The translations under genes and the position numbers were made by a program. The notes under the pieces are model-generated. The model was not told the DNA's origin. It saw nothing but the letters and a program-made list of their open reading frames with translations, and searched no databases. From positions 124,001 through 188,000 of IMG/VR virus record IMGVR_UViG_3300020178_000002: 64,000 nt of DNA; one strand, 5' to 3'. Each line of letters starts with the position of its first letter. Position 1 is the stretch's first letter. This document shows positions 22,213 through 59,902 of the stretch, in pieces.

Positions 22213-23049
22213 ATGAACAAAATACAGAGATTAGAAGCAAGAGTAGCTAGGCTTGAAAAAGAGTCTTTTATTTCGGCTCAAAAAGTATGGGATACAGCAA
22301 ACAGCATACTCCCTCAATTAAACAGGCTTAAGGGTGCTGCGAAAGAGCTGATTAGACTAGTGACAGGTGCTATACGCAGTGTTTGGGCAGAGTTGAATTT
22401 AATAGTTCGCAAGAAGAACAAGAAGAAGATACTTGGTTATTTGGAAGCTTCTTTTGAAGAAACTATAAAGAATGCTTTCCAGCCATTTGTCTCGGTGTCA
22501 GAGCCACCAGAGCTTGTGGCATTCTTGCCAGGCAATCTATTAGGTTCTACTTTTAGGTTCAAGAATAGGAAGTATCAGCTTAAAGAGTTATTAAGGCATG
22601 ATGCTGTGACAGGTCAAGGTGCTTACAATGCATATAATGAGTGGGTCACAGAGTATGGGTTATACTTGGACTATATGATGGATAAGTACCCAAGACCAGA
22701 CAGCAAAGTGGGCAAGAAGGTTGTTTATCAGATGATGGAGAACCTGAAAATAGGGAGACTTAGCAAACTTGCTTGGAAGTTTTTTAACATTTGGATAAAG
22801 GTAAGTTCCCAGATTGGTTTAGTGGTTGGTTTAGCGACAGCTTTATCTGCACTTTCTTTAGCTGTGGGTGTGAGAGGGGCAGTGAAAACATTTACTACTC
22901 TCCTTAATAATAAGATAGACAAGGAGATAGGTAAGACAGACTTAGCTAGTAATCCTTTGTTTGACCCTAACAAGACAGCCTCTCAAAGGAAGCTTTCATC
23001 TTTAGCTTTAGTGACCTTAGTGTTAGAGGACATTCACTATTCTTATTAG
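22213..23049 (+). CDS. Leader-tagged protein, distant member of the 27.8-32.7 kb hydrophobic paralog family
   Basis: Leader MNKIQRLEARVARLEKES; AYNEWVTEY matches AYxSWxxDY; hydrophobic stretch; KTAS before a short C-terminal tail. Confidence 0.75.
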   Translation: MNKIQRLEARVARLEKESFISAQKVWDTANSILPQLNRLKGAAKELIRLVTGAIRSVWAELNLIVRKKNKKKILGYLEASFEETIKNAFQPFVSVSEPPELVAFLPGNLLGSTFRFKNRKYQLKELLRHDAVTGQGAYNAYNEWVTEYGLYLDYMMDKYPRPDSKVGKKVVYQMMENLKIGRLSKLAWKFFNIWIKVSSQIGLVVGLATALSALSLAVGVRGAVKTFTTLLNNKIDKEIGKTDLASNPLFDPNKTASQRKLSSLALVTLVLEDIHYSY

Positions 23050-23431: not shown

Positions 23432-23432
23432 A

Positions 23433-23992: not shown

Positions 23993-24035
23993 AAGAGCTC
24001 TATTGCCATCATGTTGGTAGTAGAGCTTTTTTTTT
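23993..24035 (+). terminator. Intrinsic terminator
   Basis: AAGAGCTCTATTGCCA / TGGTAGTAGAGCTTTT stem plus T run. Confidence 0.85.
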
Positions 24036-24072
24036 GTTTATTGATAGCCTTCTTATAAGATAAAGAAAGGCT

Positions 24073-24597: not shown

Positions 24598-24606
24598 GGT
24601 ATTAGT

Positions 24607-25977: not shown

Positions 25978-25986
25978 GAGAATAAA

Positions 25987-27790: not shown

Positions 27791-27846
27791 TATTCCATTT
27801 ATATCACCCTTAGCTTGTAAAAAGTGTAATCAGCGAGGGTTATATA

Positions 27847-28947
27847 ATGAATAAAGTATCTGCACAGCAAATCAGATCTCTTGAGGTCAGAATAGCTAGG
27901 CTTGAAAAAGAAGCTGGCTTTCAAGAGTTTATGGAAAGTGTCTCTAGTACATTTAAAAGCATAGTTAACATTCCTAAAAACATGGTGATTAGGATAATAA
28001 ATGCTTTTAAAGAAATTTTTACAACTGTAGAACTGTCATTAGAAGACGAAGAAAAAACAATTGAAAATGCACTTGGCTTTTTATTGGGTTCTCGCATCTT
28101 TAGAGCAATGGCTGGAGTCATAACAACAACAGATGATTTGCCTACGATTGTTAAATTCAATAGGAAGCAGCCTTTAAAGTCTACATTCACGGGTGGGCTT
28201 GCAGGAAAGGCTAAGGTTCAATTAAAGAACCTTATTAAGCGTTATAATGAAACAAACCAGACAAGAATGAAGTCTGCCTATCTTTCATGGTATTCAGATT
28301 TCAAGCACATCCTAAACCCAAAAATTAAAGAAGTTGAGGGTGTTGAATTTGCACTTCGAGAAATCAAGAAGGTCTCAAAGTTAGCATATAGGTTCTTGTC
28401 TTCAATCATCTCTGTATTAGGTGGTGTTGTTGCTATTAAAGGGACAGTGATCTCAACTCTGCTATTTATACTAGGTAGGATCTTTTTGCAGAAGTATGGT
28501 TTTCCAGTAGGAAGACCTAGTGAATGGACTCAAAATGAAGTTGTTTTTTCAAAGGTCACTGTTGAACCCGTAAATGCTACTATACATAGGAATGTAATAG
28601 ACGTTACCAGAGATAGATATAGTGATTATAAGAAACTTTCTCCTATACAAAAGCAGATTTTTGTTGAAAAAATACATGCTAAGGTAGAACAACACCCAAT
28701 GAAAAATTGGCAACCAGATTCAGCAGCTAACCTTCAAGATGTTAAGGATTGGATTAGATGGAAGCCTATTCAGTTTACCACAGCAATCTTGACACCTATT
28801 TTAGCACTCATTGAAACAATTATGTACAAGTGGGTGATTAAGACAGACGAATATGATGAAATGGTAAAAGAGCTAGAATCAAGAAATAAGAAAGCTTCTC
28901 AATACCCAACACTCTCTTATTTAACTCAGATTTTAGAAGGCAGGTGA
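27847..28947 (+). CDS. Leader-tagged hydrophobic paralog 1
   Basis: MNKVSAQQIRSLEVRIARLEKEAG; STFTGG; two hydrophobic segments; KKASQYP tail. Confidence 0.85.
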   Translation: MNKVSAQQIRSLEVRIARLEKEAGFQEFMESVSSTFKSIVNIPKNMVIRIINAFKEIFTTVELSLEDEEKTIENALGFLLGSRIFRAMAGVITTTDDLPTIVKFNRKQPLKSTFTGGLAGKAKVQLKNLIKRYNETNQTRMKSAYLSWYSDFKHILNPKIKEVEGVEFALREIKKVSKLAYRFLSSIISVLGGVVAIKGTVISTLLFILGRIFLQKYGFPVGRPSEWTQNEVVFSKVTVEPVNATIHRNVIDVTRDRYSDYKKLSPIQKQIFVEKIHAKVEQHPMKNWQPDSAANLQDVKDWIRWKPIQFTTAILTPILALIETIMYKWVIKTDEYDEMVKELESRNKKASQYPTLSYLTQILEGR

Positions 28948-28950
28948 GAC

Positions 28951-30051
28951 ATGAATAAGGTATCAGCACAACAAATTAGATCTCTTGAGCTTAGGATAGC
29001 TAGGCTTGAAAAAGAGGCTGGCTTTATAGATGATATGGTAGGTGTCTTTAAAAAGACACTCAACATACCTAAGAATATGTTCTTAAAGATACTTTATGCC
29101 TTCAAAGAAGTTTATGATGATGTTGTTGTATGGAACACAGAATCAGAATCTAAGGCTATGGATTCATTAGGTGCATTATTGGGCATAAGAATATTTAGAT
29201 CTTTAGCTGGTGTTATAACTACAAGTGAGGGTTTACCTAAAATTGTCAAGTTCAACTACTCTGACCCTTTAAGCTCAACCTTCACAGGTGGACTTGCAAT
29301 GAAGTCTAATATCCCTCTTAAGAAGCTTATCAATATGTATGAGGGTGAGAACCAGACCAGAATGAAGAGAGCTTACACTTCATGGTATGCAGACTATAAA
29401 GAAATCATAAACCCTTCTGTCTCTGATAGAGAAGCGATTGATATTTTCTTAGATCTTTGTAAAAGAGGTGGGAAGTGGCTCTATCGCTTAATGACTGCCC
29501 TTATAGGTTTGGTTGGTATAGCGACTCTTAAGTCCACAGTCATATTCAACATCATTATTATGGTTGTACAGAGATATGTGCAGATAGGGATGTTTGATTT
29601 TCGAAATATGGATAAGAGAATTCTGGACTTCCAAGAAACAACAGTAAAGTATATAGACATAAAATCTGTTAAGTATCTTGAAGCAGAGGGTGTTATTGAA
29701 AACACTCACAAATTCATATCTGATGTTCTGGTTGGTGGGAGAGGGTATGTTCCTCGAAAAGAAGTAAAGGAATTTACTCTCGCTATTGTTGAAAAGCCCT
29801 TGCAGAAATACCAACCTATTGATTTTGTGTCTTGGAAAAAAGTTAGAGAGTACATGACACAAAACTACACTACCTTTATTGGTGTTTTCCTAACAGGATT
29901 CTTAGCTCTACTTGAGAAAGCACTTTATAAATGGGTCTTTAAAACAGAAGACTATGAAAAGATGAAAGCTGAAAGTGATGCAATGGGCAAGACAGCTTCT
30001 AAATACCCTGCAATTGCTTATATGGCTAGAAAGCTAGAAAGCTATTTATGA
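28951..30051 (+). CDS. Leader-tagged hydrophobic paralog 2
   Basis: Same leader; STFTGG; KTASKYP tail. Confidence 0.85.
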   Translation: MNKVSAQQIRSLELRIARLEKEAGFIDDMVGVFKKTLNIPKNMFLKILYAFKEVYDDVVVWNTESESKAMDSLGALLGIRIFRSLAGVITTSEGLPKIVKFNYSDPLSSTFTGGLAMKSNIPLKKLINMYEGENQTRMKRAYTSWYADYKEIINPSVSDREAIDIFLDLCKRGGKWLYRLMTALIGLVGIATLKSTVIFNIIIMVVQRYVQIGMFDFRNMDKRILDFQETTVKYIDIKSVKYLEAEGVIENTHKFISDVLVGGRGYVPRKEVKEFTLAIVEKPLQKYQPIDFVSWKKVREYMTQNYTTFIGVFLTGFLALLEKALYKWVFKTEDYEKMKAESDAMGKTASKYPAIAYMARKLESYL

Positions 30052-30632
30052 TATACTCGCTTCAATGTACCTACTCAAATGGCATAAGAATAAACTCTTT
30101 AAATATATCACTTGCTAATGGACAGTCTTTCGATTGCCCAAAGCAAACATATGATACTAATAAAGAAATCCAAGCTCTGGTGTCCTCTGGTATGTTGAAG
30201 CTAAAAGTAAAAGAACACAAGTCTGGCCTTAGAGCGAACTCTAATAAACGAGTTTTACGAAGCAACCCGACTAATGAGAGAGTTGTAGAGAGAGTTGTAG
30301 AGAGAGTTGTTGAATCCCCAATAGACATGGATGCAATCACTAGGAATGTAGTTGAGCAAATAGGTGCTGTACTATCTCCTGAGATATTGGCTCAAGCAAT
30401 TGCAGCACAACTCCCTACTGTCCAAGCTAATTACCCACAGAAAAATGAGGGTAATAGTTCTTTTATGTCTTCTAGTGAAGACAATCTAATGTTTATCCCC
30501 TCTACTATTGTAGATAGAAATACTGTTGCTTCTAAATCCTCTGCCTCTGAAAGCATATCGGAAGACTCTGATGGTCTTGCTGATGCTATGGCTGCTTTAA
30601 AAGCAATGAAAAAGAAGAAAGGTCAAACCTAA
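30048..30632 (+). CDS. Hypothetical protein with ERVV x3 repeat
   Basis: 194 aa, overlapping both neighbours; 12-bp coding repeat GAGAGAGTTGTA. Confidence 0.75.
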   Translation: MIYSLQCTYSNGIRINSLNISLANGQSFDCPKQTYDTNKEIQALVSSGMLKLKVKEHKSGLRANSNKRVLRSNPTNERVVERVVERVVESPIDMDAITRNVVEQIGAVLSPEILAQAIAAQLPTVQANYPQKNEGNSSFMSSSEDNLMFIPSTIVDRNTVASKSSASESISEDSDGLADAMAALKAMKKKKGQT

Positions 30633-31564
30633 TGAATAAAGTATCTGCACAGCAAATCAGATCTCTTGAAATGAGAATTGCCAGACTCGAAAGAGAGGCT
30701 GGTCTTAAAGAAATCTTTGATGACATCTCTGGATTTGTTAAAGGTGTTGTTAACATTCCTAAAAACTTCATCAAGAAAATCATCAATGTTTTCAAAGATG
30801 TTGGAAACAACCTAACTGTCCTTCTTTCAAAACAAGAAGATAGGATTGTTAGAGCCCTTAAATCTGCATTGGGAATCCGAGTAGCTGCGACTCTTGAAGG
30901 CTTTGTTATAGATACTAGAGATCTTCCTATCATTGTAGACTTTAATCTTATGAATCCTATTAAGTCTACTTTCACAGGTGGCAATGCAGGATCTTCAAAA
31001 GTATCTTTGGACAAGTTGGCATCTCTCTATGATGGAGAAGAAGCTAGAAGAATTAAGTCAGCTTTCCTTTCATGGAAATCAGACTACCTTCCTTCTTTAA
31101 ATGCATTACAAGGAAAAGATGATGTTGGAGTTATTAAGGGCTTTCTAAAACTGATACAAAGGTCATCTAAACTGCTTTACAGATTCTTGAAGATTGCTCT
31201 AAGCATATTCAGCATTGCCCAGCTTATTGCAGCACCTTGGGGATCTTGGGTTTTAGGTTTAGCTATGGTCTTCATAGGGAATCATAATATGTTGCCTATA
31301 TCAGCCGACTATACTCTTCTAACAGATAAGAGTCTAGCTAATATTATGGATGCCAAAGACTTCTTACCTCGTAATGAAGTTCCATTGTTGAAATCTTTTG
31401 GTCCTGCTATTATCACTACTGTTCTTAAGATTCTTGAAAAAGCATTCTATCGCTATGGTGTTAATGTTGATGCCTTTGACGAGGAATCTATGGGTAGAAC
31501 AGCTTCTCAATTCCCAAGAGTTGCTTCTGTAACTAGAAGACTCGAACACTACGCTTACGCTTAA
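30632..31564 (+). CDS. Leader-tagged hydrophobic paralog 3
   Basis: Same leader; STFTGG; RTASQFPRVAS tail. Confidence 0.85.
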   Translation: MNKVSAQQIRSLEMRIARLEREAGLKEIFDDISGFVKGVVNIPKNFIKKIINVFKDVGNNLTVLLSKQEDRIVRALKSALGIRVAATLEGFVIDTRDLPIIVDFNLMNPIKSTFTGGNAGSSKVSLDKLASLYDGEEARRIKSAFLSWKSDYLPSLNALQGKDDVGVIKGFLKLIQRSSKLLYRFLKIALSIFSIAQLIAAPWGSWVLGLAMVFIGNHNMLPISADYTLLTDKSLANIMDAKDFLPRNEVPLLKSFGPAIITTVLKILEKAFYRYGVNVDAFDEESMGRTASQFPRVASVTRRLEHYAYA

Positions 31565-31615
31565 TATCTTATTTATCATTAGCTTCCTGTGAAAAAAACA
31601 CAGGGGGCTGATGAT

Positions 31616-31747
31616 ATGACAAGATACCAGATGAAAAGATTAGAGATGAGGATTTCCAGAAAACTCGAAAGGAAGTCCAAACTTCAACTTCAGCGTATCT
31701 ATCAGAGATTAGCTTCTTTAGAAAAAGAGGTTAAATCCAATGAATAA
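31616..31747 (+). CDS. 43-aa peptide made of two leader-like motifs (not in the ORF track)
   Basis: MTRYQMKRLEMRISRKLERKSKLQLQRIYQRLASLEKEVKSNE; AGGGGG SD; own TA-N5-TTTAT motif. Confidence 0.65.
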   Translation: MTRYQMKRLEMRISRKLERKSKLQLQRIYQRLASLEKEVKSNE

Positions 31748-32669
31748 AGTATCTGCACAGCAAATCAGATCTCTTGAAATGAGAATAGCTAGACTTGAAA
31801 GAGAAGCTAGCTTTCAAGATGTTTTGGATGACATCAGTGGTTTTGTTAAAGGTGTTGTTAATATCCCTAAGAACTTTATTAAAAACATCATCAATGTTTT
31901 GAAGGATGTAGGTAACAACCTTAAAGCAACTTTTGCTGAACAGCGTGAAGTTATTTGTGAAGCCCTAGAGTCTGCATTGGGAATCCGAGTAGCTGCTACT
32001 CTACAAAACTTTATTGTAGATACCAGAGACATGCCTGTTATCGTTGAGCTCAATGTAATGAACCCAATCAAGTCGATATTCACAGGTGGTAAAGCTGGTT
32101 CTTCAAAGTATGCTCTTGATAAGCTGGCATCTCTTTATGACCGTGAAAGGTCTAAAAGAATCAAGTCTGCATACCTCTCTTGGAAGTCAGACTACTCTTC
32201 TCAAATAGATATTCTTCAAGGAAAATTTGATGAGTCTAACTCTGTTAAAAGATTAATGAAGTTTCTTCAAAGAAGCTCTAAGGTTGCTTATAGATTTTTC
32301 AAAGTTCTTTTCAGCATAGTCTCTATGACAGAGGTTATTGCAGCACCTTGGGGCTCTTGGATTATTGACCTAGCAACAATTACAGTAGGGTCACTTGATC
32401 TAATACCATTTTTACCAAAAGAGTCATGGACTCTTAGTAAAGTTGAAAGTATCACTGGTTTATCTTTCACTACCAATACCCTGAGTAAAAGTGTGGTCAA
32501 GACAATCCCTGCTACAATAGTCACCTCTGTTCTTAAGCTTCTTGAAAAAGCATTCTATCGCTATGGTGTTAATGTTGACGCTTTTGACGAGGAATCTATG
32601 GGTAGAACAGCTTCTCAATTCCCAAGAGTTGCTTCTATAACTAGAAGACTTGAAAACTATATCCTTTAG
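31740..32669 (+). CDS. Leader-tagged hydrophobic paralog 4
   Basis: Same leader; close paralog of 30632..31564 with a near-identical 3' end. Confidence 0.85.
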   Translation: MNKVSAQQIRSLEMRIARLEREASFQDVLDDISGFVKGVVNIPKNFIKNIINVLKDVGNNLKATFAEQREVICEALESALGIRVAATLQNFIVDTRDMPVIVELNVMNPIKSIFTGGKAGSSKYALDKLASLYDRERSKRIKSAYLSWKSDYSSQIDILQGKFDESNSVKRLMKFLQRSSKVAYRFFKVLFSIVSMTEVIAAPWGSWIIDLATITVGSLDLIPFLPKESWTLSKVESITGLSFTTNTLSKSVVKTIPATIVTSVLKLLEKAFYRYGVNVDAFDEESMGRTASQFPRVASITRRLENYIL

Positions 32670-32683
32670 AAAGGCTCGAAAGA

Positions 32684-33091
32684 ATGAATAAAGTATCTGC
32701 ACAGCAAATCAGATCTCTTGAAATGAGAATAGCTAGACTCGAAAGAGAGGCTGGTCTTATAGACCATTTCTATAAATCTCCATACAAAGAAAAACTAAGC
32801 CCTGAAGATATAATAAAAGGCTTTATTAAAGTTTTTAATCGTGCTTGTAGACATGGAAGTGTTATGTCTATCTACTCAGACCCATATGAAAATGATTTCA
32901 TCCTTACCTTGAGACTTAACATCGGGATTGTAAAAATAAAAGTTTCTATAGATGGGGAATTGATAGAGGTCTATAAAAATGATGGTGCTGTATACACAAG
33001 GCTTATGGCATCTTTTGAATACAAAGATATTAAAAAGGGAATGGTCAAGGTTGTTAAAGCCCTTGAAGCTAAATCTATTTACTATGTATAA
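32684..33091 (+). CDS. Leader-tagged hypothetical protein with unrelated body
   Basis: Identical MNKVSAQQIRSLEMRIARLEREAG leader, then no visible similarity to paralogs 1-4. Confidence 0.8.
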   Translation: MNKVSAQQIRSLEMRIARLEREAGLIDHFYKSPYKEKLSPEDIIKGFIKVFNRACRHGSVMSIYSDPYENDFILTLRLNIGIVKIKVSIDGELIEVYKNDGAVYTRLMASFEYKDIKKGMVKVVKALEAKSIYYV

Positions 33092-33151
33092 AGCTTTTAT
33101 TGTTTAGAGGTATAATAATAACAAACCCCTAAAGAATAAGGAGACTCTATC

Positions 33152-34144: not shown

Positions 34145-34150
34145 TTAAAC

Positions 34151-34196
34151 AAAAAAAGAAGCCCCACTCCCCAATTAAGGGAAGCAGGGCTTCTTT
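34151..34196. terminator. Bidirectional terminator between convergent genes
   Basis: A7-GAAGCCC..TCCC / GGGA..GGGCTTC-TTT. Confidence 0.75.
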
Positions 34197-34229
34197 AATA
34201 AAAATCGTAGGGCTTAATCCAAGTGGATG

Positions 34230-34523
34230 TTAGATAAGTTCAATGCCTTCAGAATCATATATATGATGACCCATTCTCTCGGAGAGAAGATGAAGAAGTA
34301 CCTTATCTGCTGGTAATGTTATAGTTTCAGAGTCACCATTTGAAAAATGGACTTTTCGGTTTCTTGAGTCAAACTCTATGAAACCGATATTACTTCCATC
34401 ATGGGAATCTTTTTCAACATGTCTTTGAAGTAAGTCAAAGTTGATCTTTACCGCAGCTTCTTTTTCGAGTCTAGCGATTCTCATTTCTAGTTCAGAAATA
34501 ATTTTTTGAGCTGATTTGTTCAT
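34230..34523 (-). CDS. Leader-tagged small hypothetical protein
   Basis: MNKSAQKIISELEMRIARLEKEAA; AAGGAG SD; TA-N5-TTTAT at 34562-34575 on the minus strand. Confidence 0.8.
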   Translation of the reverse strand: MNKSAQKIISELEMRIARLEKEAAVKINFDLLQRHVEKDSHDGSNIGFIEFDSRNRKVHFSNGDSETITLPADKVLLHLLSERMGHHIYDSEGIELI

Positions 34524-49986: not shown

Positions 49987-52743
49987 ATGTTTGATCATAT
50001 ACTAAAAGAGCTAAGAGTCTCTAAAACTTTGCTGGATAAAACATCTGAAGCTCTTAGAAAGAGAGCTGAAGATAAAGAAATTCTTCAAAAAGCTAGAGAG
50101 TCCTTAAAGGATAAAAAATATAAAGACCCCGAGAACAATAAGGAGATCTCTTTTAGTACTGCATACAATAGGAAAGTACCTCAAGCCCAACAAGACCTCC
50201 AGAAAGCCCTCTCCAAAGTCAGGTCTGAAGGTCAAGAAGAAGGTTCAGTGGATACTAGTGGCCTAAATGAAGAACAAGTAGATCTTCTTGAAAGAATAGC
50301 GAAAGGTAAAAAGACCAGCGATATGTCTCTGGTTGAGCAGAGAACCTTAAGAGAGTCTTTGGCCTTACTTTTTGATGCTCAGGACACATTGAAAAAAGAT
50401 GGAGTTGAAGAACCTTTAAAGACAGCAGAGCCTAAGAAGAAAAAACAGTATGCTAAAAAGGTAAAAAAGAAAGTAGTCGAGAAGGGTGAGAAAGTTGTCA
50501 AAAGTCTTAAAAAAGAGAAAGATTTACCAGAAGACACTACCATAGAAGATATTGTAGATGTAGACACCCTAGCTGAAACACATTCTGAAGATGCAAATGC
50601 CATAGATACTACTTTAAAGAAGCAAGAGAGCAGCAGGAAAGATAAGCTTAAGAAGAGGTTTCAAGAGCAAGAACAGAAAGCAGACAAAGATAAAGGTGCA
50701 ATCTTAAAGAGTCTGGAGAAATCCATAGACTCTTTTTCTCAGAAAGCTATTGAAGACCTTGAGGATAAGATAAAAGATGTTAAAGAGTCTTTGCAAAACA
50801 AATCCCATTCTAAAGACAAGCTTGATGATCTTGAAGAACAGCTTGAAGATCTTGAGTACCAGAAAGACATAAGAGAGCTAAATGCAAAAAATACCCAAGC
50901 GAAGTATCAAAAATCATTAAAAGATGCATTGGAAAACATACCTGATTTTGATGATGAACAAACAAAGAAGCTTTCCGAGTCCTATGCTAAAATGGGTGGT
51001 GATCTAGTAAGGAAACTAGAGGATATAGAAGATCTCAAGAGCTTTGTAGATGATAACCTATCAGAGTTAGAAAACTTAGATGAGTCTAGTGAGGAGTATG
51101 CAGAAAATGTAGGTAAACTAATGGCTCTTAAAACAATGAAAGAGGAAGTTATTAGTGACCCTACATTTGGCTTTTCTCCACCAGCTAAGAATTCAAGTCC
51201 AGAATTCTTAGAGGAATACAAAGAGTTTTTAGGGGAAGAACAAAGAAAGAAGTTCAATTCTTTCACCCCCGAAGAAAGAAATTCTGCTAGTTCAAAGCTT
51301 GCGTATGAAAAAGAAGACTTAATGGACATAATAGATGACGCAAGTACTTCACCAGAAAAAAGAGAGGAAGCCCAAAGGAGACTTTTCTTAGTTAAAGAAA
51401 CCGAATCAGCTCTCAACACCTCTCGAATACTGAATGGAGAAGACCCTATAGATGGTTATTACTATGTGGATGAGAATCTTTTAAATATAGCTAAGACTGA
51501 TGATGGTGAATATAATGAAAGTCTAGTCAAAGCTATCTCTGTTATTTCAAAGACAGATGTTTCAAATGAAGAGATGAGAAGCATTGTAGATACTGCTCTA
51601 AAAGATATGCCATTAGAACAGTGGGAGTCCATAGTTGGAGATTCTGAAATATACAATAGTATGAAAGGTCCTTTAGATCCTCTTTACTGTCCCATACACC
51701 CAGACAATATAGCAAAGGGTGTTAGTGGAGAAACAGTAAACAGAAAAGAAGATTGTCCTAGACCTGTTAGTGAGGACATGATCAACACTATCAAAGACAC
51801 TATCAACAAATCCTATTTAGATATACAGACCTCATTTAAAGCTCAATCTAAGAAGAAGTCTCTAACAACTCGTAAGAACAAAAACCTATCTAAGTTTCTA
51901 CATGAAAACCAAGATGATTTTATGGAGAAGCTAGTAAGTGGGGTAGGAAAAGATGGCAATCCAATAACAGACGAAGAAAAGGAAGACTTCATGAATTTCT
52001 TCTTCATGAAGATAAGAGGACTCAGTGTTTTGAATCTTGACCTGCAAGGTGAAAAGATCACAGGTGTTCGAGACATTATGAAGCAACTAAATCGTGTTCG
52101 AAAATTGGATGGGGCAGAGAAGATAAGAGCAACAGAAGAGCTTAAGAAGGTTTTTCTTGATTTAATGGAGAAAGATCCTATCGAAAAGCAGTCTTCTTTT
52201 AATAATCTATTTATTGACTATACTAATACCTATGGAGGTGTATTCATGCACAAAAAATCAACAACATACCAAGACTACCAGAAAAGAAGTAAAGACTTCA
52301 AAGTAGGTATGAAAGTATATTACTTTTGGGAGGGCAACAGTAGCCAACCTGGAGTAGTTGTTGCTGTCTACCCTTCTATTGGTATGGTAGATGTCGAATA
52401 CCCTCATGGCAGTCAAAGAATCCCTGTCGAAGAACTTATCGTTGATGCTTCAGGAGATGTCAAGGCATTGCCTGAGTCAACGATTCCAGGTGGCAGGGGG
52501 GTTGTTCCTGTAAGTGCGAGAGTAGCAAATAACTACTTGAAAAAAGCTATTTATTGGAGAAATATAAATAGAAGATACAAGCTATGTAAAGGTGAAGACC
52601 CCAACAAGCCAAACTGCCCAAAGTGTAAAACCCAAATGGGTAAAACAGTTTATAAGAGAAGAGACTCACAGAGCGAAAGACTATTTGCCTGCCCTAGTTG
52701 TCTCTTTGTTATCAAGTCCTCTGATATTGAAGGAGCAAACTAA
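49987..52743 (+). CDS. Large charged coiled-coil head-region protein with C-terminal SH3-like and zinc-ribbon domains
   Basis: Start moved to ATG 49987; K/E/D-rich; C-terminal FKVGMKV...PGVVVAV and CPKC...CPSC; probable in-frame internal start at 52246. Confidence 0.7.
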   Translation: MFDHILKELRVSKTLLDKTSEALRKRAEDKEILQKARESLKDKKYKDPENNKEISFSTAYNRKVPQAQQDLQKALSKVRSEGQEEGSVDTSGLNEEQVDLLERIAKGKKTSDMSLVEQRTLRESLALLFDAQDTLKKDGVEEPLKTAEPKKKKQYAKKVKKKVVEKGEKVVKSLKKEKDLPEDTTIEDIVDVDTLAETHSEDANAIDTTLKKQESSRKDKLKKRFQEQEQKADKDKGAILKSLEKSIDSFSQKAIEDLEDKIKDVKESLQNKSHSKDKLDDLEEQLEDLEYQKDIRELNAKNTQAKYQKSLKDALENIPDFDDEQTKKLSESYAKMGGDLVRKLEDIEDLKSFVDDNLSELENLDESSEEYAENVGKLMALKTMKEEVISDPTFGFSPPAKNSSPEFLEEYKEFLGEEQRKKFNSFTPEERNSASSKLAYEKEDLMDIIDDASTSPEKREEAQRRLFLVKETESALNTSRILNGEDPIDGYYYVDENLLNIAKTDDGEYNESLVKAISVISKTDVSNEEMRSIVDTALKDMPLEQWESIVGDSEIYNSMKGPLDPLYCPIHPDNIAKGVSGETVNRKEDCPRPVSEDMINTIKDTINKSYLDIQTSFKAQSKKKSLTTRKNKNLSKFLHENQDDFMEKLVSGVGKDGNPITDEEKEDFMNFFFMKIRGLSVLNLDLQGEKITGVRDIMKQLNRVRKLDGAEKIRATEELKKVFLDLMEKDPIEKQSSFNNLFIDYTNTYGGVFMHKKSTTYQDYQKRSKDFKVGMKVYYFWEGNSSQPGVVVAVYPSIGMVDVEYPHGSQRIPVEELIVDASGDVKALPESTIPGGRGVVPVSARVANNYLKKAIYWRNINRRYKLCKGEDPNKPNCPKCKTQMGKTVYKRRDSQSERLFACPSCLFVIKSSDIEGAN

Positions 52744-52744
52744 G

Positions 52745-54133
52745 ATGGCATTTTTAAGGTACGCAAAAGCTAATGTAGTTCGCCCTCAAGTACACGGGCT
52801 AGATTGGGACAAAGTAAGAGTTGCTTCTGGTAATAGGCAACTAAACCAATCTTTAAAGAAAAAAGCTGAAGATATTCTAGGGGAGGCATTTACCCCAGAT
52901 AGATTTCTTTTAACACATGCTACTATCGTATGTTCTGTAGATTCTGTAACGCCTCCAAATACAAAAACAGGATCTATTAAAGAAGGTGGCTTTACTATAA
53001 ACAGAAAGTATTCTGATTACAGAATCTCAAAGGAGACTGACAAGTATATTAATAATAACCTAGACTCATGGTCTAGAGGTGTTATTAAAAGATCTTATCA
53101 GACTTTCATAGGTTCTCATAACTTTGTAGAGCATGTTCAAGTAGAAGAGCTTTCTAAGGGCAAAATCATTGATGCTGTTTTAAGAGACATTGGTGAAAGC
53201 CTCTATGTAGATATTCTAGTAGCTACTGATAGGAAACACAAAGACCTTGTAGAGCAGATTCTCTCTGGCCAGATGAACTCTATGTCTATGGGTTGTTCAG
53301 TCGATTTTACTATTTGTACTAAATGTGGTCACGTTGCAGCAGACGAAACTGAAATGTGTTCACATGTGAAGTATGAAAAAGGAAATACATTCTTTGATGA
53401 CCAAGGCAATAAGCACAGAGTTGCTGAGTTATGTGGTCACGAAGATGTGGGTGAGACTGCTGGTGTTACTTTTATTGAGGCTTCTTGGGTTGCAACTCCT
53501 GCTTTTCCAGGTGCGGTTGCTAGAAATACCATTGAAATACCCTCTTCTGATAACCCCTCAGAAGTTCCTTCAAAATGGGTAGATAAATCTGCAAGCCTTT
53601 CTTTAACTTCTGCTTTTGGAATGGAAGAAGAAGAAGAATCTGAAGAAGGTGGAGATAAAGAACCAGCAGACGAGTCTCTCCTTAAGAAGCTAGATTCAGT
53701 ATATGAGCAAGCTATCATAGACAGATTCAAGAATAAGCTTGAAACTGAGATGAAGAAAGAGAAAGCTCAAGAGAAACTCTATCCTCCCACAAGTCAATCT
53801 TCTGTAGCCCAGAACGACACTGTGATTAAAGAAGGAAAGAAAGTCTCAACCAGAGAGTATACTAAAGCATTAGATATTTCTGTAAAGACAGCTTCTAATT
53901 TAGAAGAAGCACTCTTTAACATTGCTTTAGTAAACAATCACTTTGGTGTCAGCATCCCTTCTCACCTTTATAAGATAGCCAGTAAGCTAGGAAGCACTTC
54001 TAAATATGCATCTGTTCAAGATTATATTGAGAAAGCTGTAAGCCTACATGGTAAAGCATTATCGGAGAAAGATTCTTTCATCTTAATTCGGTTAGCAAAA
54101 ATAACATCCCTTAACAACTTCGGGCAGAAATAA
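52745..54133 (+). CDS. Prohead maturation protease (HK97/herpes assemblin-like) with Zn-binding insertion
   Basis: Start moved to ATG 52745 (AAGGAG SD); NFVEH, GKIIDA, SMSMGC, CTKCGH...CSH, FIEASWVATPAFPGA; upstream of scaffold and capsid genes. Confidence 0.8.
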   Translation: MAFLRYAKANVVRPQVHGLDWDKVRVASGNRQLNQSLKKKAEDILGEAFTPDRFLLTHATIVCSVDSVTPPNTKTGSIKEGGFTINRKYSDYRISKETDKYINNNLDSWSRGVIKRSYQTFIGSHNFVEHVQVEELSKGKIIDAVLRDIGESLYVDILVATDRKHKDLVEQILSGQMNSMSMGCSVDFTICTKCGHVAADETEMCSHVKYEKGNTFFDDQGNKHRVAELCGHEDVGETAGVTFIEASWVATPAFPGAVARNTIEIPSSDNPSEVPSKWVDKSASLSLTSAFGMEEEEESEEGGDKEPADESLLKKLDSVYEQAIIDRFKNKLETEMKKEKAQEKLYPPTSQSSVAQNDTVIKEGKKVSTREYTKALDISVKTASNLEEALFNIALVNNHFGVSIPSHLYKIASKLGSTSKYASVQDYIEKAVSLHGKALSEKDSFILIRLAKITSLNNFGQK

Positions 54134-54169
54134 AGTCTTGCCCTCTACGATATGAAAGGACTATGCCTT

Positions 54170-55819
54170 ATGTCTAGGTATTCCCGTTCTAAGTCTCGCA
54201 TGACTTCAGCTCGAAAAAGTCGTGTTCGCAAAGCAACCTCATCAGTTCCAGGTTATGATAATCTAGGTTGGGATCACTTCGGTCACCCTGCTTCAGCAGA
54301 ACAACCAGATCTTGAAGAATATGGTATTGATTCTGATTTCGGTGAAGGTGTTCGCAAAGGTCCTTATGAGGACAGCCCTGCACCTGCTTCTTACTCATGG
54401 GAGCCTGATCACCCTGCACACTCAAAGAAAGCTCTAAAGAGTGCTATGGAGCGTAAAGCTGCTAAGTGCATTCGTATTGCTGAGTCTCGTCTTGGTAAGT
54501 TTGCTTCTCAACGTGAGATCGAAGATCTTGCACTTCGCTTCATGGATCTTCCTAACAGTGTAATCAACTCAAGAGTTGCTAGCATTGAAGACCCAATGGC
54601 TGAAGAAATTGATGCTATGCATGATATGTATGCAGAAGACATTGATCCAATGGCTGAAGAAGTCGAAGGTATGATGTACGCAGAAGACCCTATGGCTGAA
54701 GAGGTTGAAGGCATGATGTATGCTGAAGACCCTATGGCTGACCTTATGTATGACGACATGGATGACGACATGGGTATGATGGCAGACCTTATGGATGACT
54801 CTATGGATGATTCTATGGATATGATGGCAGACCTTATGGATGACTCTATGGATGATTCTATGGATATGATGGCAGACCTTATGGATGATTCTATTGATGA
54901 CGACATGGATATGATGGCTGACCTTATGGATGATGACATGGGTGATTCTATTGATGACGACATGGGTATGATGGCTGAAAGTCTTTTCGCTATGGAGCAT
55001 GACGCTATGGAGCATGACGCTATGGAGCATGGCATGTTTGCAAGCATTGATGAGCCTGTAGCAGACGACATGGGCGACATCATGGCAGACTTGTTTGGAG
55101 AAGAAACTGAGAGTGAAGCTGATATCCTAGCTGACGAAGTTGCTAGTCTTAAAGCTGCAAATGCCAGACTAGCTCGCAAAGTAAGAAATCTTAGCAGAAC
55201 TGTAAACGCTTCTAAAGCAGAGGAAGTAAAAGCAGAAGAGACTGAGGCAGAAGAAACTGAAAGCACCGAAGAGAAAGTAGCTCGTATCGAGAGACTTGCA
55301 AACGCTTTAGCTGACTACATGGCTGAGATGGAGCGTACTGCTGCTGAAGAGGAAGAAGCTAAAGAGGAAGAAGCTCCTAAAGAAGAAGCTAAAGAAGAAG
55401 CTCCTAAAGAGGAAGCTAAAGAAGAAGCTCCTGCTGAGAAGAAAGCTTATAACTCAATGGCAGATATTCTTGCAGAGCTTGAAGTAGAGAGTGAAGAAGT
55501 TGATCCTATGGCAGAAGAGCTTGAGCCTGTAGCTGAAGACCCAATGGGACTAGACAGTGTGGCTGACATGCAAATTGATGCTCGTCTTGCTTCTATCTTC
55601 ACTGCTGGTGAAGAAGGTGAAGTTGCAGAAGAAACTGAAGCAGAAGAAACTGAAGCAGAAGAAACTGATGCTGGTAAGAAAGCTTCATATCGCCCAAGCA
55701 CTCAAGCTCGTCAAGCATCTGTAAAGACTCTTGGAAACATCAGTCGTGAAGCTTCAAGCTCTGATGAACTCAGCAAGCTTTGGGAATCTGCTCCAGACGT
55801 AAGCAAATTCTTCGGTTAA
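54170..55819 (+). CDS. Capsid scaffold-like acidic protein with Met/Asp repeats
   Basis: Start moved to ATG 54170; highly acidic, low complexity, coiled coil; between protease and capsid genes. Confidence 0.75.
   Translation: MSRYSRSKSRMTSARKSRVRKATSSVPGYDNLGWDHFGHPASAEQPDLEEYGIDSDFGEGVRKGPYEDSPAPASYSWEPDHPAHSKKALKSAMERKAAKCIRIAESRLGKFASQREIEDLALRFMDLPNSVINSRVASIEDPMAEEIDAMHDMYAEDIDPMAEEVEGMMYAEDPMAEEVEGMMYAEDPMADLMYDDMDDDMGMMADLMDDSMDDSMDMMADLMDDSMDDSMDMMADLMDDSIDDDMDMMADLMDDDMGDSIDDDMGMMAESLFAMEHDAMEHDAMEHGMFASIDEPVADDMGDIMADLFGEETESEADILADEVASLKAANARLARKVRNLSRTVNASKAEEVKAEETEAEETESTEEKVARIERLANALADYMAEMERTAAEEEEAKEEEAPKEEAKEEAPKEEAKEEAPAEKKAYNSMADILAELEVESEEVDPMAEELEPVAEDPMGLDSVADMQIDARLASIFTAGEEGEVAEETEAEETEAEETDAGKKASYRPSTQARQASVKTLGNISREASSSDELSKLWESAPDVSKFFG
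54590..55030 (+). repeat. Coding tandem repeats (EDPMAEEVEGMMYA; 45-bp MADLMDDSMDDSMDM; 15-bp AMEHD)
   Basis: Exact 45-bp units at 54779-54823 and 54824-54868, plus degenerate copies. Confidence 0.9.
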
Positions 55820-55963
55820 TCCGAGAATTGTTTAATAGTTTGTTTATAGCAAACGCATAACTAATGGAACTATTGGGGTTGGGTTTTGACCCACCTCTTC
55901 TTTTATTAACACACTACTCACTTGATTACAGTGAGTATGAGCAAATCACATAGGAGATTAACT

Positions 55964-56545
55964 ATGGCTCTACTTGGACAAGCAAGTGGTGGGTTCACTG
56001 AGAGCAGCTCTGCTCTTCGTATTTTGCACGTTGGTGTTCGTAACACTGTCGGTCAACTTACAGAAGACAGCTTCACTCAGACCAACCCCCCAATCGAAAC
56101 TACTGCTGCTAGAGTAAGTACTTCAGCAGGTCTTTTAACCAACGCTCTTGGTATTCTTTCAGGCTCTATTGCATTCGCAAGACCTGACGAGGGTGCTAAC
56201 TATCATGGTGGTCCTTCTGCAAGAGTTGCTGCTAGCGACCGTGTTCTTGGTGTTTTCATCAACAATGCTTCTGGCAATGCTTTTGAGAACCAACCTGGTG
56301 TAGCAAGCAACAGAGGACCTTATGTTTCAGCACAAGGTACTTATGCTAACCGTCTTTATGAGACATCACAAACAGGTGCTGATGTTGCTCTCACTTACAC
56401 CATTGGTGAATCACTATTTGCTTCTGTAAATGGTTACTTAACTAATGACACAAATGAGAGAGCTTTTGATGAGACTGTTATCGGTGTTCTTAAAATCTCT
56501 CCGGACTCTAGCTCAGACGAGTTGGTTTACGATCAACGCATCTGA
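55964..56545 (+). CDS. Putative capsid decoration/cement protein
   Basis: Start moved to ATG 55964 (AGGAG SD); immediately upstream of the major capsid gene; Gly/Ser/Ala-rich. Confidence 0.6.
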   Translation: MALLGQASGGFTESSSALRILHVGVRNTVGQLTEDSFTQTNPPIETTAARVSTSAGLLTNALGILSGSIAFARPDEGANYHGGPSARVAASDRVLGVFINNASGNAFENQPGVASNRGPYVSAQGTYANRLYETSQTGADVALTYTIGESLFASVNGYLTNDTNERAFDETVIGVLKISPDSSSDELVYDQRI

Positions 56546-56563
56546 TAGGAAAGGAAGTATATT

Positions 56564-57442
56564 ATGAGTAATACAGTTGATAATTCAGTAAAACAAAAGA
56601 TCATTAGCGACTACATCAAGACCCCTCAAGGTCGTGCAAAGCTAGCTGCTTCAATGACTCAACCTCTTCGTCTTCGCCGTGACTATACAAGCGTTGGTCG
56701 TAAGACCTTCCTTGTTGAGCAACTTCCTGATGGTGCGTTGCCTATTTACGACAAAGACCCAGACGTAACAGCTTTCGTAGTTGGTGAAGAAGGCGAGAAC
56801 ATTCTTGCTATCACCAAGCCTCGTCGTGTTATCTTCCCTCTCTTTGAGATTGCTTCTAACCCTGAGATTCCTTTAACTCAGATCAAGGAAAGACGCTTCG
56901 ATCTTATCGAGAGAGCACAGGATCTTGCTAGAGCACAAATTCAGGCTGCTGAAGACGAGCGTGTATTCGCTATTCTTGACGCAGTTGCAGCTAATGGTTT
57001 CGACAGCGTTTCTGGTCAAACCAATGCTGACATTCCTGTTATCGCTCCTCTTAATGGTGCTGTTCTTGCTGACGCATACAGCCTAATTGAGAGACATGAC
57101 CTTAGAGTTGCCCGTGTATTTATGAATGCTAGAGACTATGCTGACATTCGTAAGTTCGGTCGTGACATTCTCGATATCGAGAGTCAAGCAGCCCTTCTCA
57201 AGACAGGTCTACAAGCAACTCTTTGGGGTGCTCAAATCATCACAAGTCGTCTTGTTCCTGTTGGTACAGTTTATGTTTGTTGTGAGCCAGAAATGTTCGG
57301 TCGTATCCCTGTTCGTACAGAGTTGACTGTTCTTTCTGCTGACGATCCAAAAGCTCGTACAATCGGCTTCTCTTGCTTCGAGAATCTAGGTATCGGTGCT
57401 TATAACCCTCGTGGTCTTGCTAGACTTACTGTTACTCGCTAA
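56564..57442 (+). CDS. Major capsid protein (HK97 fold)
   Basis: 292 aa; PLFEIASNPEI...RRFDLIERAQ...IQAAEDERVF, VFMNARDYADIRK, LWGAQIITSRLVPVG; strongly biased codons; terminator follows. Confidence 0.88.
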   Translation: MSNTVDNSVKQKIISDYIKTPQGRAKLAASMTQPLRLRRDYTSVGRKTFLVEQLPDGALPIYDKDPDVTAFVVGEEGENILAITKPRRVIFPLFEIASNPEIPLTQIKERRFDLIERAQDLARAQIQAAEDERVFAILDAVAANGFDSVSGQTNADIPVIAPLNGAVLADAYSLIERHDLRVARVFMNARDYADIRKFGRDILDIESQAALLKTGLQATLWGAQIITSRLVPVGTVYVCCEPEMFGRIPVRTELTVLSADDPKARTIGFSCFENLGIGAYNPRGLARLTVTR

Positions 57443-59198: not shown

Positions 59199-59765
59199 AT
59201 GAAGAAATCTGCAAATGAAATTATTCAAAATCTTGAAACCAGAGTAGCCCAGCTTGAAAAGAAGTCTGCTCGAAAGTTCTCCCTATCCGCAGACTACCAT
59301 TATGTGTTTAAGCGTAGTTATTATGCTAAGTCTGTAGAGCGAGTAGACCATTCTAAGGTTCTCTTTGAGGGCCCTAAAAAGAAGTTTATTCCTCAAGGTT
59401 GGTCATATGGAGTTGATGAGATCAATTCTTTTGTTGAGAGAGATTTGATTCAGGAGATTGGTAAGATCCAAAAAGAGATCGAGGAAGTTTTTTATGCAAG
59501 TGGAGTTGACCCAACAGAGTTAAGGGAAGATTTCGAGGACTCTGGCAACAAGTTTGAGTGGGTGTTGGTTGCTCAAGGTCGTGCGTATGAGGGAGAGGTT
59601 TTGAAACTCGCCTATGTACGCATTAAAGATAAGACCTACAACTTCTATGTAGCACCCTCAATCGAAATTAAGGTTCTCAACACAAAAGGCAGGGCTGTTA
59701 AGGCAAACTACATCCTTAATACCCTAGCATCCGAGCTAGGTATGAGAACTGTCCGTATCGGTTAA
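59199..59765 (+). CDS. Leader-tagged hypothetical protein
   Basis: MKKSANEIIQNLETRVAQLEKKSA; AAGGAG SD. Confidence 0.8.
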   Translation: MKKSANEIIQNLETRVAQLEKKSARKFSLSADYHYVFKRSYYAKSVERVDHSKVLFEGPKKKFIPQGWSYGVDEINSFVERDLIQEIGKIQKEIEEVFYASGVDPTELREDFEDSGNKFEWVLVAQGRAYEGEVLKLAYVRIKDKTYNFYVAPSIEIKVLNTKGRAVKANYILNTLASELGMRTVRIG

Positions 59766-59808
59766 GAACGTCTAGTAGGTTTGGACTATGAAAGTGGTCA
59801 GCTAAATT

Positions 59809-59847
59809 AAGCCCTGCTACCCTTATTGGGTGGTGGGGGTTTTTTTT
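59809..59847 (+). terminator. Intrinsic terminator (direct-repeat copy 1)
   Basis: AAGCCCTGCTACCC-TTATT-GGGTGGTGGGGGTTT plus T run. Confidence 0.85.
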
Positions 59848-59902
59848 GTTTGTTTATAGTCCTAGGTGTCGTGTACCCTCACCAATACCATAAGGATTAG
59901 CT

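What the first reader, a model, noticed from the sequence alone, without database searches (positions are those of the whole stretch)
30632..33091. DNA-level identity of tag and tail points to recent grafting or gene conversion
Seen: ATGAATAAAGTATCTGCACAGCAAATCAGATCTCTTGAAATGAGAAT (47 bp) is identical at 30632, 31740 and 32684, and its first 38 bp also at 27847. The gene at 32684 has a body unrelated to the others. The last ~110 coding bp of 30632 and 31740 are nearly identical while their middles have diverged. Inference: the tag moves as a DNA module, and homologous ends allow payload swapping, which would explain how new cargo is recruited.
Basis: partly seen in the sequence, partly recalled or inferred. 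Interest (0 to 1): 0.68.

Follow-up and report, generated by a model that had tools for sequence, protein, structure and literature searches.

The report
Leader-tagged gene cassettes shuffled by recombination
In a 312-kb marine giant phage, neighbouring genes that share a 22-residue N-terminal "address" peptide have recently copied that peptide's DNA (and a shared 3' tail) onto one another, and related phages show whole genes gained, lost or moved exactly at these shared ends, much as the injected internal-protein genes of T4-like phages are shuffled.

Summary
The 47-nt leader is identical at 30632, 31740 and 32684, and its first 38 nt recur at 27847. None is expected by chance. Genes C (30632) and D (31740) have almost no synonymous differences in the leader and in the last ~130 nt. 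Their middles are near saturation.

Selection on the nucleotides does not explain this. Other leader copies in this genome and in relatives differ at about 20% of sites. An assembly error is unlikely, because 21 independent contigs carry the same gene order.

Relatives show the D gene as a 944-nt unit in three states: before E, before C, or absent. The breakpoints lie inside the leaders. D's leader in the window matches its neighbours (1-3 mismatches in 60) better than its own orthologue (6 in 60).

Recent grafting of the leader onto an untagged body is not supported. Every E orthologue is tagged, and an exhaustive search found no untagged homologue.

The leader sits on about 25-28 ORFs. These include a membrane-protein family, a JmjC-like enzyme and a pentapeptide-repeat protein. 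Many lie near head genes. I infer a capsid-targeting role like the T4 leader, but this is untested.

The parts
30632..30678 (+). 47-nt leader tract of gene C, identical to the tracts at 31740 and 32684
31740..31786 (+). 47-nt leader tract of gene D. It is identical to E's leader for 58 nt.
32684..32730 (+). 47-nt leader tract of gene E
27847..28947 (+). Gene A (366 aa), a leader-tagged paralogue with hydrophobic segments. The first 38 nt are identical to C, D and E.
28951..30051 (+). Gene B (366 aa), a leader-tagged paralogue. Its leader peptide is almost the same (Leu for Met at codon 14) but differs at 9-12 of 60 nt, which shows that synonymous sites are free to vary.
30048..30632 (+). Untagged 194-aa gene conserved in all relatives. 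Its stop codon overlaps the start of C.
30632..31564 (+). Gene C (310 aa), a leader-tagged paralogue. Its body is replaced by a divergent allele in relative L001.
31404..31551 (+). 3' tail of C, 92% identical to the tail of D, with excess synonymous identity
31617..31747 (+). Small conserved ORF (43 aa from the inner ATG, 52 aa from GTG at 31589) with degenerate leader-like heptads. Its stop codon is formed by codons 2-3 of the next gene's leader.
31740..32683 (+). The 944-nt D cassette: leader, 309-aa body, tail and 14-nt spacer. It is absent in L001-L010 and L012, sits before E here and in L024, and sits before C in L011.
32512..32659 (+). 3' tail of D
32684..33091 (+). Gene E (135 aa): leader helix, a disordered linker, then a compact alpha/beta domain. 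The body is unrelated to A-D and has no homologues outside this phage group.
25987..27230 (+). Two more leader-tagged genes (270 aa and 148 aa). The 148-aa gene is absent in L001. In L011 an extra 152-aa tagged gene is inserted ahead of the 270-aa gene.
22213..23049 (+). Leader-tagged 278-aa distant member of the membrane-protein family
34230..34523 (-). Leader-tagged 97-aa gene between the actin-like gene and the ligase gene. It is present or absent among relatives.
59199..60802 (+). Two leader-tagged genes just downstream of the capsid gene: 188 aa, and 299 aa with a Cupin_8/JmjC domain
52592..57442 (+). Head module: maturation protease, acidic scaffold-like protein (555 aa, zipper motif at residues 326-347), decoration-like protein and major capsid protein

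Best explanation
The window lies in a complete 312,136-bp phage genome with terminal repeats, from marine or estuarine metagenomes.

SHOWN:
- About 25-28 of its ORFs begin with one ~22-residue leucine-zipper-like leader (consensus M-R-R-S-A-S-E-I-I-R-N-L-E-x-R-I-A-R-L-E). Conservation stops sharply after the invariant L-E.
- Ten of these ORFs form an array at 22-34 kb of the window, and two more lie just after the capsid gene.
- Within the array, the leaders of A, C, D and E, and the 3' tails of C and D, have been homogenised at the DNA level by short-tract homologous exchange (gene conversion). The bodies kept their old divergence.
- Among closely related genomes, the leader and the tail are the places where cassettes are inserted, deleted or relocated and where divergent alleles are swapped in.

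INFERRED (mechanism of exchange): ordinary phage homologous recombination between these direct repeats produces the exchanges. It could act within one genome or between co-infecting relatives, possibly through excised circles as shown for T4-type PeSL cassettes.

INFERRED (role of the leader): the leader directs proteins into the assembling head, and may be removed after the invariant Glu by the head maturation protease. On this reading the array is a fast-evolving repertoire of packaged, probably injected, proteins.
For: Tract-limited loss of synonymous divergence:
- Leader 13/14 identical codons, tail 35/38, middle 72/131.
- The tail excess is seen in three genomes: 32/36, 29/35 and 26/35 identical codons.

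Concerted-evolution sites:
- They are concentrated in the leader and tail (p = 2.8e-4 and 1.5e-4).
- The window's D leader differs from E and C by 1 and 3 of 60 nt, but from its L024 orthologue by 6 of 60, with bodies 95.6% identical.
- D reads Leu-Glu-Met like the window's C and E, where both D orthologues read Leu-Glu-Ile.

E leader variation:
- It exists in three forms among orthologues. The window's form is nucleotide-identical to its neighbours.

Cassette polymorphism with breakpoints in the leaders:
- Window 31740-31814 and 32684-32758 both align to the single leader at L001 10001-10075.
- The same 944-nt D unit lies before C in L011 and before E in the window and L024.
- A 152-aa tagged gene is inserted at the start of the next tagged gene in L011.

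Tail as a junction:
- Identity between the window and L001 drops to 50-75% inside C and returns to 93-100% at the tail.
- A 38-nt tail repeat flanks an inserted pentapeptide gene in L024.

Baseline for leader DNA:
- Leaders encoding nearly the same peptide differ at 12-31 of 66 nt in relatives, and widely in this genome.

Independent assemblies:
- The exact D protein is on 21 contigs; the 4 distinct places shown, from JGI and ENA assemblies, share the gene order, and 17 similar places were not shown.

Leader function:
- The leader sits on unrelated bodies, including Cupin_8/JmjC (2.8e-22) and a pentapeptide-repeat protein whose adjacent paralogue is untagged.
- Tagged genes flank the capsid gene in two clades but have unrelated bodies.
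- The E model has a separate N-terminal helix, a disordered linker and a globular domain.
- A scaffold zipper motif is conserved in tag-bearing relatives and missing in the tag-less LR745208.1.
- An upstream motif is shared by six tagged genes and the decoration gene.
Against: - No read-level check was possible.
- The L011 gene order rests on a single contig.
- The number of informative concerted sites is small (3-5 per comparison). The direction and number of events are not resolved.
- The tail is conserved at synonymous sites in all lineages. Some nucleotide-level selection there cannot be excluded.
- Several other tagged cassettes (97 aa, 216 aa, 148 aa) come and go without a second leader next to them. 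Leader-leader exchange is therefore not the only route.
- For the capsid-targeting role there is no proteomic or structural evidence.
- LR745208.1 has an 89% identical capsid protein yet no leader at all.
- The leader does not match the published T4 or phiKZ cleavage motifs (my own knowledge).
Confidence: 0.72

Rival explanations
1. The identity reflects selection on the nucleotide sequence itself, such as a translation-initiation signal, an RNA structure or a regulatory site. No recombination is involved.
For: Identity starts exactly at the ATG. The tail is conserved at synonymous sites in every lineage examined.
Against: Leaders encoding nearly the same peptide use many different codons in this genome, for example gene B (9-12 of 60 nt different), and in relatives (12-31 of 66 nt). 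The D orthologue in L024 differs at 6 of 60 nt. There is no Rfam match and no promoter or terminator enrichment. Sites grouping by genome rather than by orthology need exchange.
Confidence: 0.08
2. C and D are a recent tandem duplication, and their middles diverged fast under diversifying selection. The identical ends are simply what has not yet changed.
For: The genes are adjacent and similar in length. pN is high in the middle.
Against: Synonymous divergence in the middle is near saturation: pS is mostly 0.4-1.0 and dS is 0.85 overall. D has orthologues 90-96% identical in L011 and L024, while C and D differ by about 36% of middle nucleotides in all three genomes. The duplication is therefore old.
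Confidence: 0.04
3. The repeat identity or the gene order is an artefact of metagenome assembly, through collapse or chimerism at repeats.
For: The genome is a short-read metagenome assembly. The L011 order comes from one contig.
Against: The exact D protein occurs on 21 contigs, ten of them 0.2-1 Mb. The 4 distinct places shown, from JGI and ENA assemblies of different samples, have the same order C, small ORF, D, E. The D-less order is seen in four independent assemblies plus six Logan contigs. The exact repeats are only 47-58 nt long, which is shorter than usual reads (my inference).
Confidence: 0.03
4. The leader was recently grafted onto a formerly untagged gene E.
For: The E body is unrelated to its neighbours. 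The 5' part of its leader differs between orthologues. Elsewhere in the genome a tagged pentapeptide protein has an untagged paralogue next to it, so leaders are gained or lost over longer times.
Against: All five E orthologue clusters (71-98% identical) carry a leader. HMMER over 1.84 billion representatives found no untagged or distant homologue.
Confidence: 0.05

Closest known systems
Internal-protein (IP) loci of T-even phages with the capsid targeting sequence (Repoila et al. 1994, as described in PMC2839356, PMC3012670 and PMC12373910)
   Same: Unrelated small proteins share only an N-terminal leader. The genes sit in hypervariable loci whose content differs between close relatives. Conserved flanking or leader sequences are thought to mediate the shuffling. 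The cargo includes anti-defence proteins that are packaged and injected.
   Different: The leader here is about 22 residues, zipper-like and unrelated in sequence. The phage belongs to the phage G / Tunturi_5 capsid lineage, not to T4. No T4-type protease or capsid family was detected. Packaging, cleavage and injection are unproven. About 25-28 genes carry the leader, including a membrane-protein family of at least 7 members.
PeSL promoter/stem-loop cassettes and mini-circles of T4-type phages (Arbiol et al. 2010, PMC2839356; PMC4122927)
   Same: Short repeated sequences that flank non-essential genes act as homologous-recombination sites. They give insertion, deletion and replacement between near-identical genomes. 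A cassette found at two alternative positions fits an excised circular intermediate.
   Different: Here the repeats are coding sequence (the N-terminal leader and the C-terminal tail), not promoter/terminator units. There is no sigma-70-like promoter enrichment. Circles have not been looked for.
Polymorphic toxin loci (Rhs, CdiA) with conserved handles and orphan cassettes
   Same: A conserved coding 'handle' joined to variable payloads, with recombination at the handle swapping payloads (my own knowledge).
   Different: In those systems the conserved delivery part is N-terminal and very large, and the payload is a C-terminal toxin paired with an immunity gene. No such organisation is seen here.
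Propeptides of head proteins in phiKZ-like giant phages, and encapsulin cargo-loading peptides
   Same: Many different proteins are brought into an HK97-fold shell by short terminal peptides. In phiKZ-like phages the propeptides are removed after Glu (my own knowledge; PMC5694885 and PMC7411985 for SPN3US).
   Different: The sequence motif differs. No cleavage data exist. Encapsulin peptides are mostly C-terminal.

Membership tests
Gene conversion / concerted evolution between paralogues | Loss of synonymous divergence confined to a tract while the rest of the genes stays diverged | tested here: met
   leader 13/14 identical codons, tail 32-35 of 36-38, middle about 55%
Gene conversion / concerted evolution between paralogues | Within the tract, paralogues of one genome are more alike than orthologues of different genomes | tested here: met
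   D to E 1 of 60 against D to D(L024) 6 of 60; genome-type sites enriched in the ends, p = 2.8e-4 and 1.5e-4
Gene conversion / concerted evolution between paralogues | The sequence is real (spanning reads or independent assemblies) | tested here: inconclusive
   Independent assemblies agree.
T4-type capsid-targeting-sequence internal-protein loci | Unrelated proteins share only an N-terminal leader | tested here: met
T4-type capsid-targeting-sequence internal-protein loci | Hypervariable loci in which bodies are exchanged between conserved leader or flank sequences | tested here: met
T4-type capsid-targeting-sequence internal-protein loci | T4-type head machinery (gp21 Peptidase_S77 protease, gp23 capsid protein) and the T4 leader sequence | tested here: not met
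   No PF03420 or PF07068 match in the genome, although the controls did not ring either. The capsid protein belongs to the phage G / Tunturi_5 group. The protease matches phrog_18299 only.
T4-type capsid-targeting-sequence internal-protein loci | The leader is cleaved by the prohead protease, and the proteins are found in the head and injected | not testable with these tools
   Needs virion proteomics or packaging assays.
PeSL-type mobile regulatory cassettes | Flanking units made of an early promoter plus a stem-loop terminator | tested here: not met
   promoter-like sites are below the shuffle expectation (17 against 28.8). Only one hairpin is seen, after gene C.
PeSL-type mobile regulatory cassettes | Excised circular forms of the cassette | not testable with these tools
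   Would need reads or inverse PCR.

The most novel reading that the evidence does not exclude
The zipper-like leader is a previously undescribed general cargo-loading address of a widespread clade of aquatic giant phages whose capsid protein is nearly invariant. It would dock about 25-28 different proteins (enzymes, DNA mimics, membrane-inserting proteins) onto a complementary basic zipper in the scaffold, for packaging and injection. Because the address is encoded by a repeated DNA stretch, it would also serve as the recombination site through which the cargo repertoire is reshuffled, like an integron but without an integrase.
Probability: 0.3. Interest if true: 0.8.

Novelty: new variant of a known kind. 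Interest (0 to 1): 0.58.

Why it matters
It gives a concrete, datable example of how giant phages renew a set of accessory proteins that are probably injected. The shared coding ends act as homology handles, so whole genes move, vanish or are replaced between genomes that are otherwise 94-100% identical. If the leader is a packaging address, it marks about 25-28 proteins per genome as candidate virion cargo in a group with no cultured member, and hundreds of contigs share the capsid gene. It would also be a simple tag for loading foreign proteins into large capsids. The tagged/untagged pentapeptide pair and the tagged JmjC-like enzyme are direct starting points for experiments.

Tried and rejected
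Function searches that gave nothing:
- Pfam and PHROGs gave nothing for A-E, the 194-aa gene or most tagged genes.
- Atlas look-alike searches for E and C gave only sub-threshold leads.
- The C model had pLDDT 51 and was not searched.
- The E model's best matches were weak and in the range of chance: Csm1 at E 5.6e-3 and TM 0.36, and a phage P1 head chain at Z 7.2. No function was inferred.

Complex prediction:
- One job was run with the scaffold zipper segment (residues 312-400) and the first 45 residues of E. It returned no verdict and counts neither for nor against binding.

Searches for the leader elsewhere:
- tblastn of the leader and of C against cultured-phage records found no match.
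- The leader pattern and profile were absent from LR745208.1, Tunturi_5 and phage G.
- The protease had no PDB or Pfam match by sequence.
- A literature search for the motif string found only c-Jun zipper papers.
- Repoila et al. 1994 is not held. It is cited through later papers and my memory.

Searches for more copies of D:
- The metagenome scan with the family alignment returned only 10 loci and no new D arrangement.
- The IMG/VR scan for D found only the window's own type.

Other:
- Rfam and promoter/terminator scans were negative.
- Rejected readings: recent duplication, nucleotide-level selection, assembly artefact and recent grafting onto E (see rival explanations).
Full report
OBSERVATION

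The 47-nt string is present without mismatch at 30632, 31740 and 32684. It is present with three mismatches at 27847, where the first 38 nt are exact. No shuffle of the window gave any match. Each copy is the start of an ORF on the + strand: A (27847-28947, 366 aa), C (30632-31564, 310 aa), D (31740-32669, 309 aa) and E (32684-33091, 135 aa). B (28951-30051, 366 aa) has almost the same leader peptide (Leu for Met at codon 14) but different codons. Identity starts at the ATG, and the bases upstream differ.

A, B, C and D, together with genome ORFs at 9039, 90020 and 91547, form one protein family. C and D are 63% identical. With the leader removed, E has no significant similarity to C or D.

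The 3' ends of C and D share 148 nt at 92% identity, with exact runs of 54 and 40 nt. None of 20000 permutations of the mismatches gave runs as long as the observed 54 and 47 nt.

IS IT MORE THAN PROTEIN-LEVEL CONSERVATION?

Yes. In sliding windows, synonymous divergence between C and D is 0 in codons 1-15 and 0-0.22 in codons 261-300. Across the middle it is mostly 0.4-1.0. At residues conserved between the two proteins, the codon is identical in 13 of 14 cases in the leader and 35 of 38 in the tail, against 72 of 131 in the middle (p = 0.004 and 8e-6).

The same leader peptide is encoded very differently elsewhere:
- B differs from C, D and E at 9-12 of 60 nt.
- The roughly 20 other leaders in the genome use many alternative Arg, Leu and Ala codons.
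- In a second clade of related phages, leaders on adjacent genes differ at 12-31 of 66 nt, with identical runs of only 7-27 nt.

The exact identity is therefore a local and recent event, not a property of the leader as such.

WHAT THE GENOME IS

The window is bases 124001-188000 of a single 312,136-bp virus record with direct terminal repeats, rated complete. It is JGI metagenome contig Ga0181599_1000001.

The window holds a tail sheath gene, a head maturation protease, an acidic scaffold-like protein, a decoration-like protein and the major capsid protein. The capsid protein is 89% identical to that of the uncultured 485-kb phage LR745208.1, 47% to Tunturiibacter phage Tunturi_5 and 38% to Bacillus phage G. 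In 573 IMG/VR contigs that encode a relative, the best 80 are 91-100% identical.

THE LEADER

A profile of 20 leaders has invariant Leu12, Arg15, Ala17, Leu19 and Glu20, and conservation ends right after Leu-Glu. It finds about 25-28 ORFs in this genome and none in LR745208.1, Tunturi_5 or phage G.

The bodies behind the leader are diverse:
- the family with hydrophobic, membrane-like segments;
- a Cupin_8/JmjC-like protein at 59903-60802 (2.8e-22);
- a pentapeptide-repeat protein at genome 225808-226434, whose adjacent 44%-identical paralogue has no leader;
- many small proteins with no known relatives.

An IMG/VR scan with a degenerate leader pattern found 33 stretches. Among them is a second clade with the variant M-R-R-S-A-S-E-I-I-R-N-L-E on more than 20 different bodies. 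These contigs share the 98%-identical capsid gene and also carry tagged genes just downstream of it, but with bodies unrelated to the window's.

The AlphaFold model of E (pLDDT 77) shows the leader as a separate helix (residues 3-30), a disordered linker and a compact alpha/beta domain.

COMPARATIVE EVIDENCE FOR EXCHANGE AT THE LEADER AND TAIL

Gene orders in relatives:

| Genome | Gene order |
|---|---|
| Window, and the 4 places shown of 21 contigs with the exact D protein | A, B, 194-aa gene, C, small ORF, D, E, actin-like gene |
| L001-L004 (about 94% nucleotide identity overall; 98-99% in A, B and E) | Same, but no D |
| L005-L010 (more distant Logan contigs) | C-like gene, small ORF, E, actin-like gene: no D |
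| L011 | A, B, 192-aa gene, D, C, small ORF, E |
| L024 | C, an inserted 261-aa pentapeptide gene, small ORF, D, E |
| L012 | Neither D nor E |
| L014 | One A-like and one C-like gene only |

In L001-L004, window 31740-31814 and 32684-32758 both align to the single leader at L001 10001-10075. The indel boundaries therefore lie inside the leaders. D is the same 944-nt unit in the window, L011 and L024.

An extra 152-aa tagged gene in L011 sits directly ahead of the next tagged gene. About 22 nt around the start codon are present on both sides of it.

The tail is also a junction:
- Identity between the window and L001 is 100% up to about 30260. It falls to 50-75% inside the C body and returns to 93-100% from about 31450, where the tail begins.
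- In L024 the inserted pentapeptide gene is flanked by a 38-nt direct repeat of the tail end. The downstream copy matches the window's C tail.

CONCERTED EVOLUTION

The window's D leader differs from E by 1 and from C by 3 of 60 nt. It differs from its L024 orthologue by 6 of 60, although the D bodies are 95.6% identical. In L011, the D and C leaders differ by 2. At codon 14 the window's C, D and E all read ATG, whereas D reads ATT or ATC in L024 and L011. This points to conversion of D by an E- or C-type leader after the split from L024.

I counted sites where C and D of one genome agree with each other and differ from the pair in another genome:
- Window against L024: 3 of 16 informative sites in leader plus tail, against 0 of 213 in the middle (p = 2.8e-4).
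- Window against L011: 5 of 13, against 5 of 173 (p = 1.5e-4).

The tail shows excess synonymous identity between C and D in all three genomes: 32/36, 29/35 and 26/35 identical codons, against about 55% in the middle. Homogenisation, or some added constraint on the DNA, is therefore recurrent.

The E leader occurs in three forms among orthologues whose bodies are 71-98% identical. These begin M-N-K-V-S-A-Q-Q, M-N-R-T-S-A and M-D-K-V-S-A-Q-K-L. The window's form is nucleotide-identical to its neighbours.

WHAT IS NOT SUPPORTED

E was not recently given a leader. All its orthologues have one. A HMMER search with the body alone over 1.84 billion representatives returned only its own cluster. C and D are not a recent duplicate pair, because D has its own orthologues and the middles differ by about 36% in every genome. 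An assembly artefact is unlikely, given independent assemblies from several samples and pipelines. The L011 order rests on one contig.

MECHANISM

Shown: short tracts of the leader and tail have been copied between neighbouring paralogues, and cassette gain, loss and relocation break in these shared sequences.

Inferred: homologous recombination between these direct repeats produces these events. It could act within a replicating genome or between co-infecting relatives. A circle excised by leader-leader exchange and re-inserted at another leader would explain the two positions of D in one step. This is the model proposed for PeSL cassettes in T4-type phages (PMC2839356).

Leader-leader exchange is not the only route. 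The 97-aa, 216-aa and 148-aa tagged genes vary without a second leader beside them.

ROLE OF THE LEADER (INFERENCE, ABOUT 45% CONFIDENCE)

I read the leader as a head-targeting address, possibly removed after the invariant Glu. Points in favour:
- The cargo is diverse.
- Tagged genes cluster around head genes in two clades.
- The leader is a detachable helix on a linker.
- A tagged and an untagged paralogue lie side by side.
- An upstream motif (TTTATAG followed by T or C) is shared by six tagged genes, the decoration gene and the gene after the capsid gene.
- A basic zipper motif in the scaffold-like protein (residues 326-347) is conserved in tag-bearing relatives and missing in tag-less LR745208.1.

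Points against, or missing:
- There are no proteomic data.
- The capsid protein of tag-less LR745208.1 is 89% identical.
- The motif differs from known T4 and phiKZ cleavage sites.

The one complex prediction gave no verdict and is not used as evidence.

COMPARISON WITH KNOWN SYSTEMS

The closest precedent is the pair of internal-protein loci of T-even phages. There, unrelated injected proteins share only the capsid targeting leader, and the loci are hypervariable (PMC3012670, PMC12373910, and PMC2839356 citing Repoila et al. 1994).

This case works like that one in the features I could test, but it is not a member:
- the leader sequence is different;
- the capsid lineage is different;
- no T4-type head families were detected;
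- the repeated unit is coding sequence at both ends of the gene.

I therefore rate it a new variant of a known kind.

Table 11 was used throughout.

Noticed in passing
whole genome (G000); window 22213-34523 and 59199-60802: About 25-28 ORFs (roughly 7% of genes, my estimate) start with the same zipper-like leader. The core R-I-A-R-L-E is the string that opens the c-Jun leucine zipper. No phage literature was found for it.
   Followed up: partly
window 59903-60802: A leader-tagged protein with a Cupin_8/JmjC hydroxylase domain (2.8e-22) lies just downstream of the capsid gene. It is a candidate packaged enzyme.
   Followed up: partly
genome 225808-227127 (locus L148): Two adjacent pentapeptide-repeat paralogues are 44% identical. 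One has the leader and one does not. The window's own pentapeptide gene (35584-36393, minus strand) is untagged. L024 has a further pentapeptide gene inserted between C and the small ORF.
   Followed up: partly
window 54152-55819: An acidic, repeat-rich scaffold-like protein has a basic zipper motif (L-K-A-A-N-A-R-L-A-R-K-V-R at about residues 336-348, inside the 326-347 motif) that resembles the leader with charges reversed. The motif is conserved in tag-bearing relatives, repeated three times or more in L126, and missing in tag-less LR745208.1.
   Followed up: partly
window 56564-57442: The major capsid protein is 91-100% identical in the best 80 of 573 IMG/VR contigs that encode a relative, while neighbouring genes are far less conserved (protease 42-70%; scaffold 35-64% over the part that aligns). 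This is unusually strong conservation, or repeated exchange, of one gene.
   Followed up: no
window 31589-31747: A small ORF (43-52 aa) is conserved in all relatives and contains degenerate leader-like heptads. Its stop codon is supplied by codons 2-3 of whichever tagged gene follows. A hairpin (CCTGTG, seven A, CACAGG) lies just upstream at 31587-31605.
   Followed up: partly
genome-wide; e.g. window 22171, 55843, 57529-57592, 59853: The motif TTTATAG followed by T or C lies 15-110 nt upstream of 11 ORFs. Six of these are tagged, and two are head-module genes (the decoration gene and the gene after the capsid gene). It may be a late promoter element. It often follows a hairpin plus a run of T.
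   Followed up: partly
window 33152-34144: An actin-like gene of the Volactin family (5e-74) is 99-100% identical in protein among relatives whose neighbouring genes vary. It is 62% identical in LR745208.1.
   Followed up: no
window 185-9208 (minus strand): A 3007-aa ORF that I did not examine.
   Followed up: no
locus L019 (LR745208.1 330000-375000): In the tag-less 485-kb cousin, the interval between the 456-aa structural gene and the actin-like gene holds only two small genes. The whole tagged array is missing there.
   Followed up: partly
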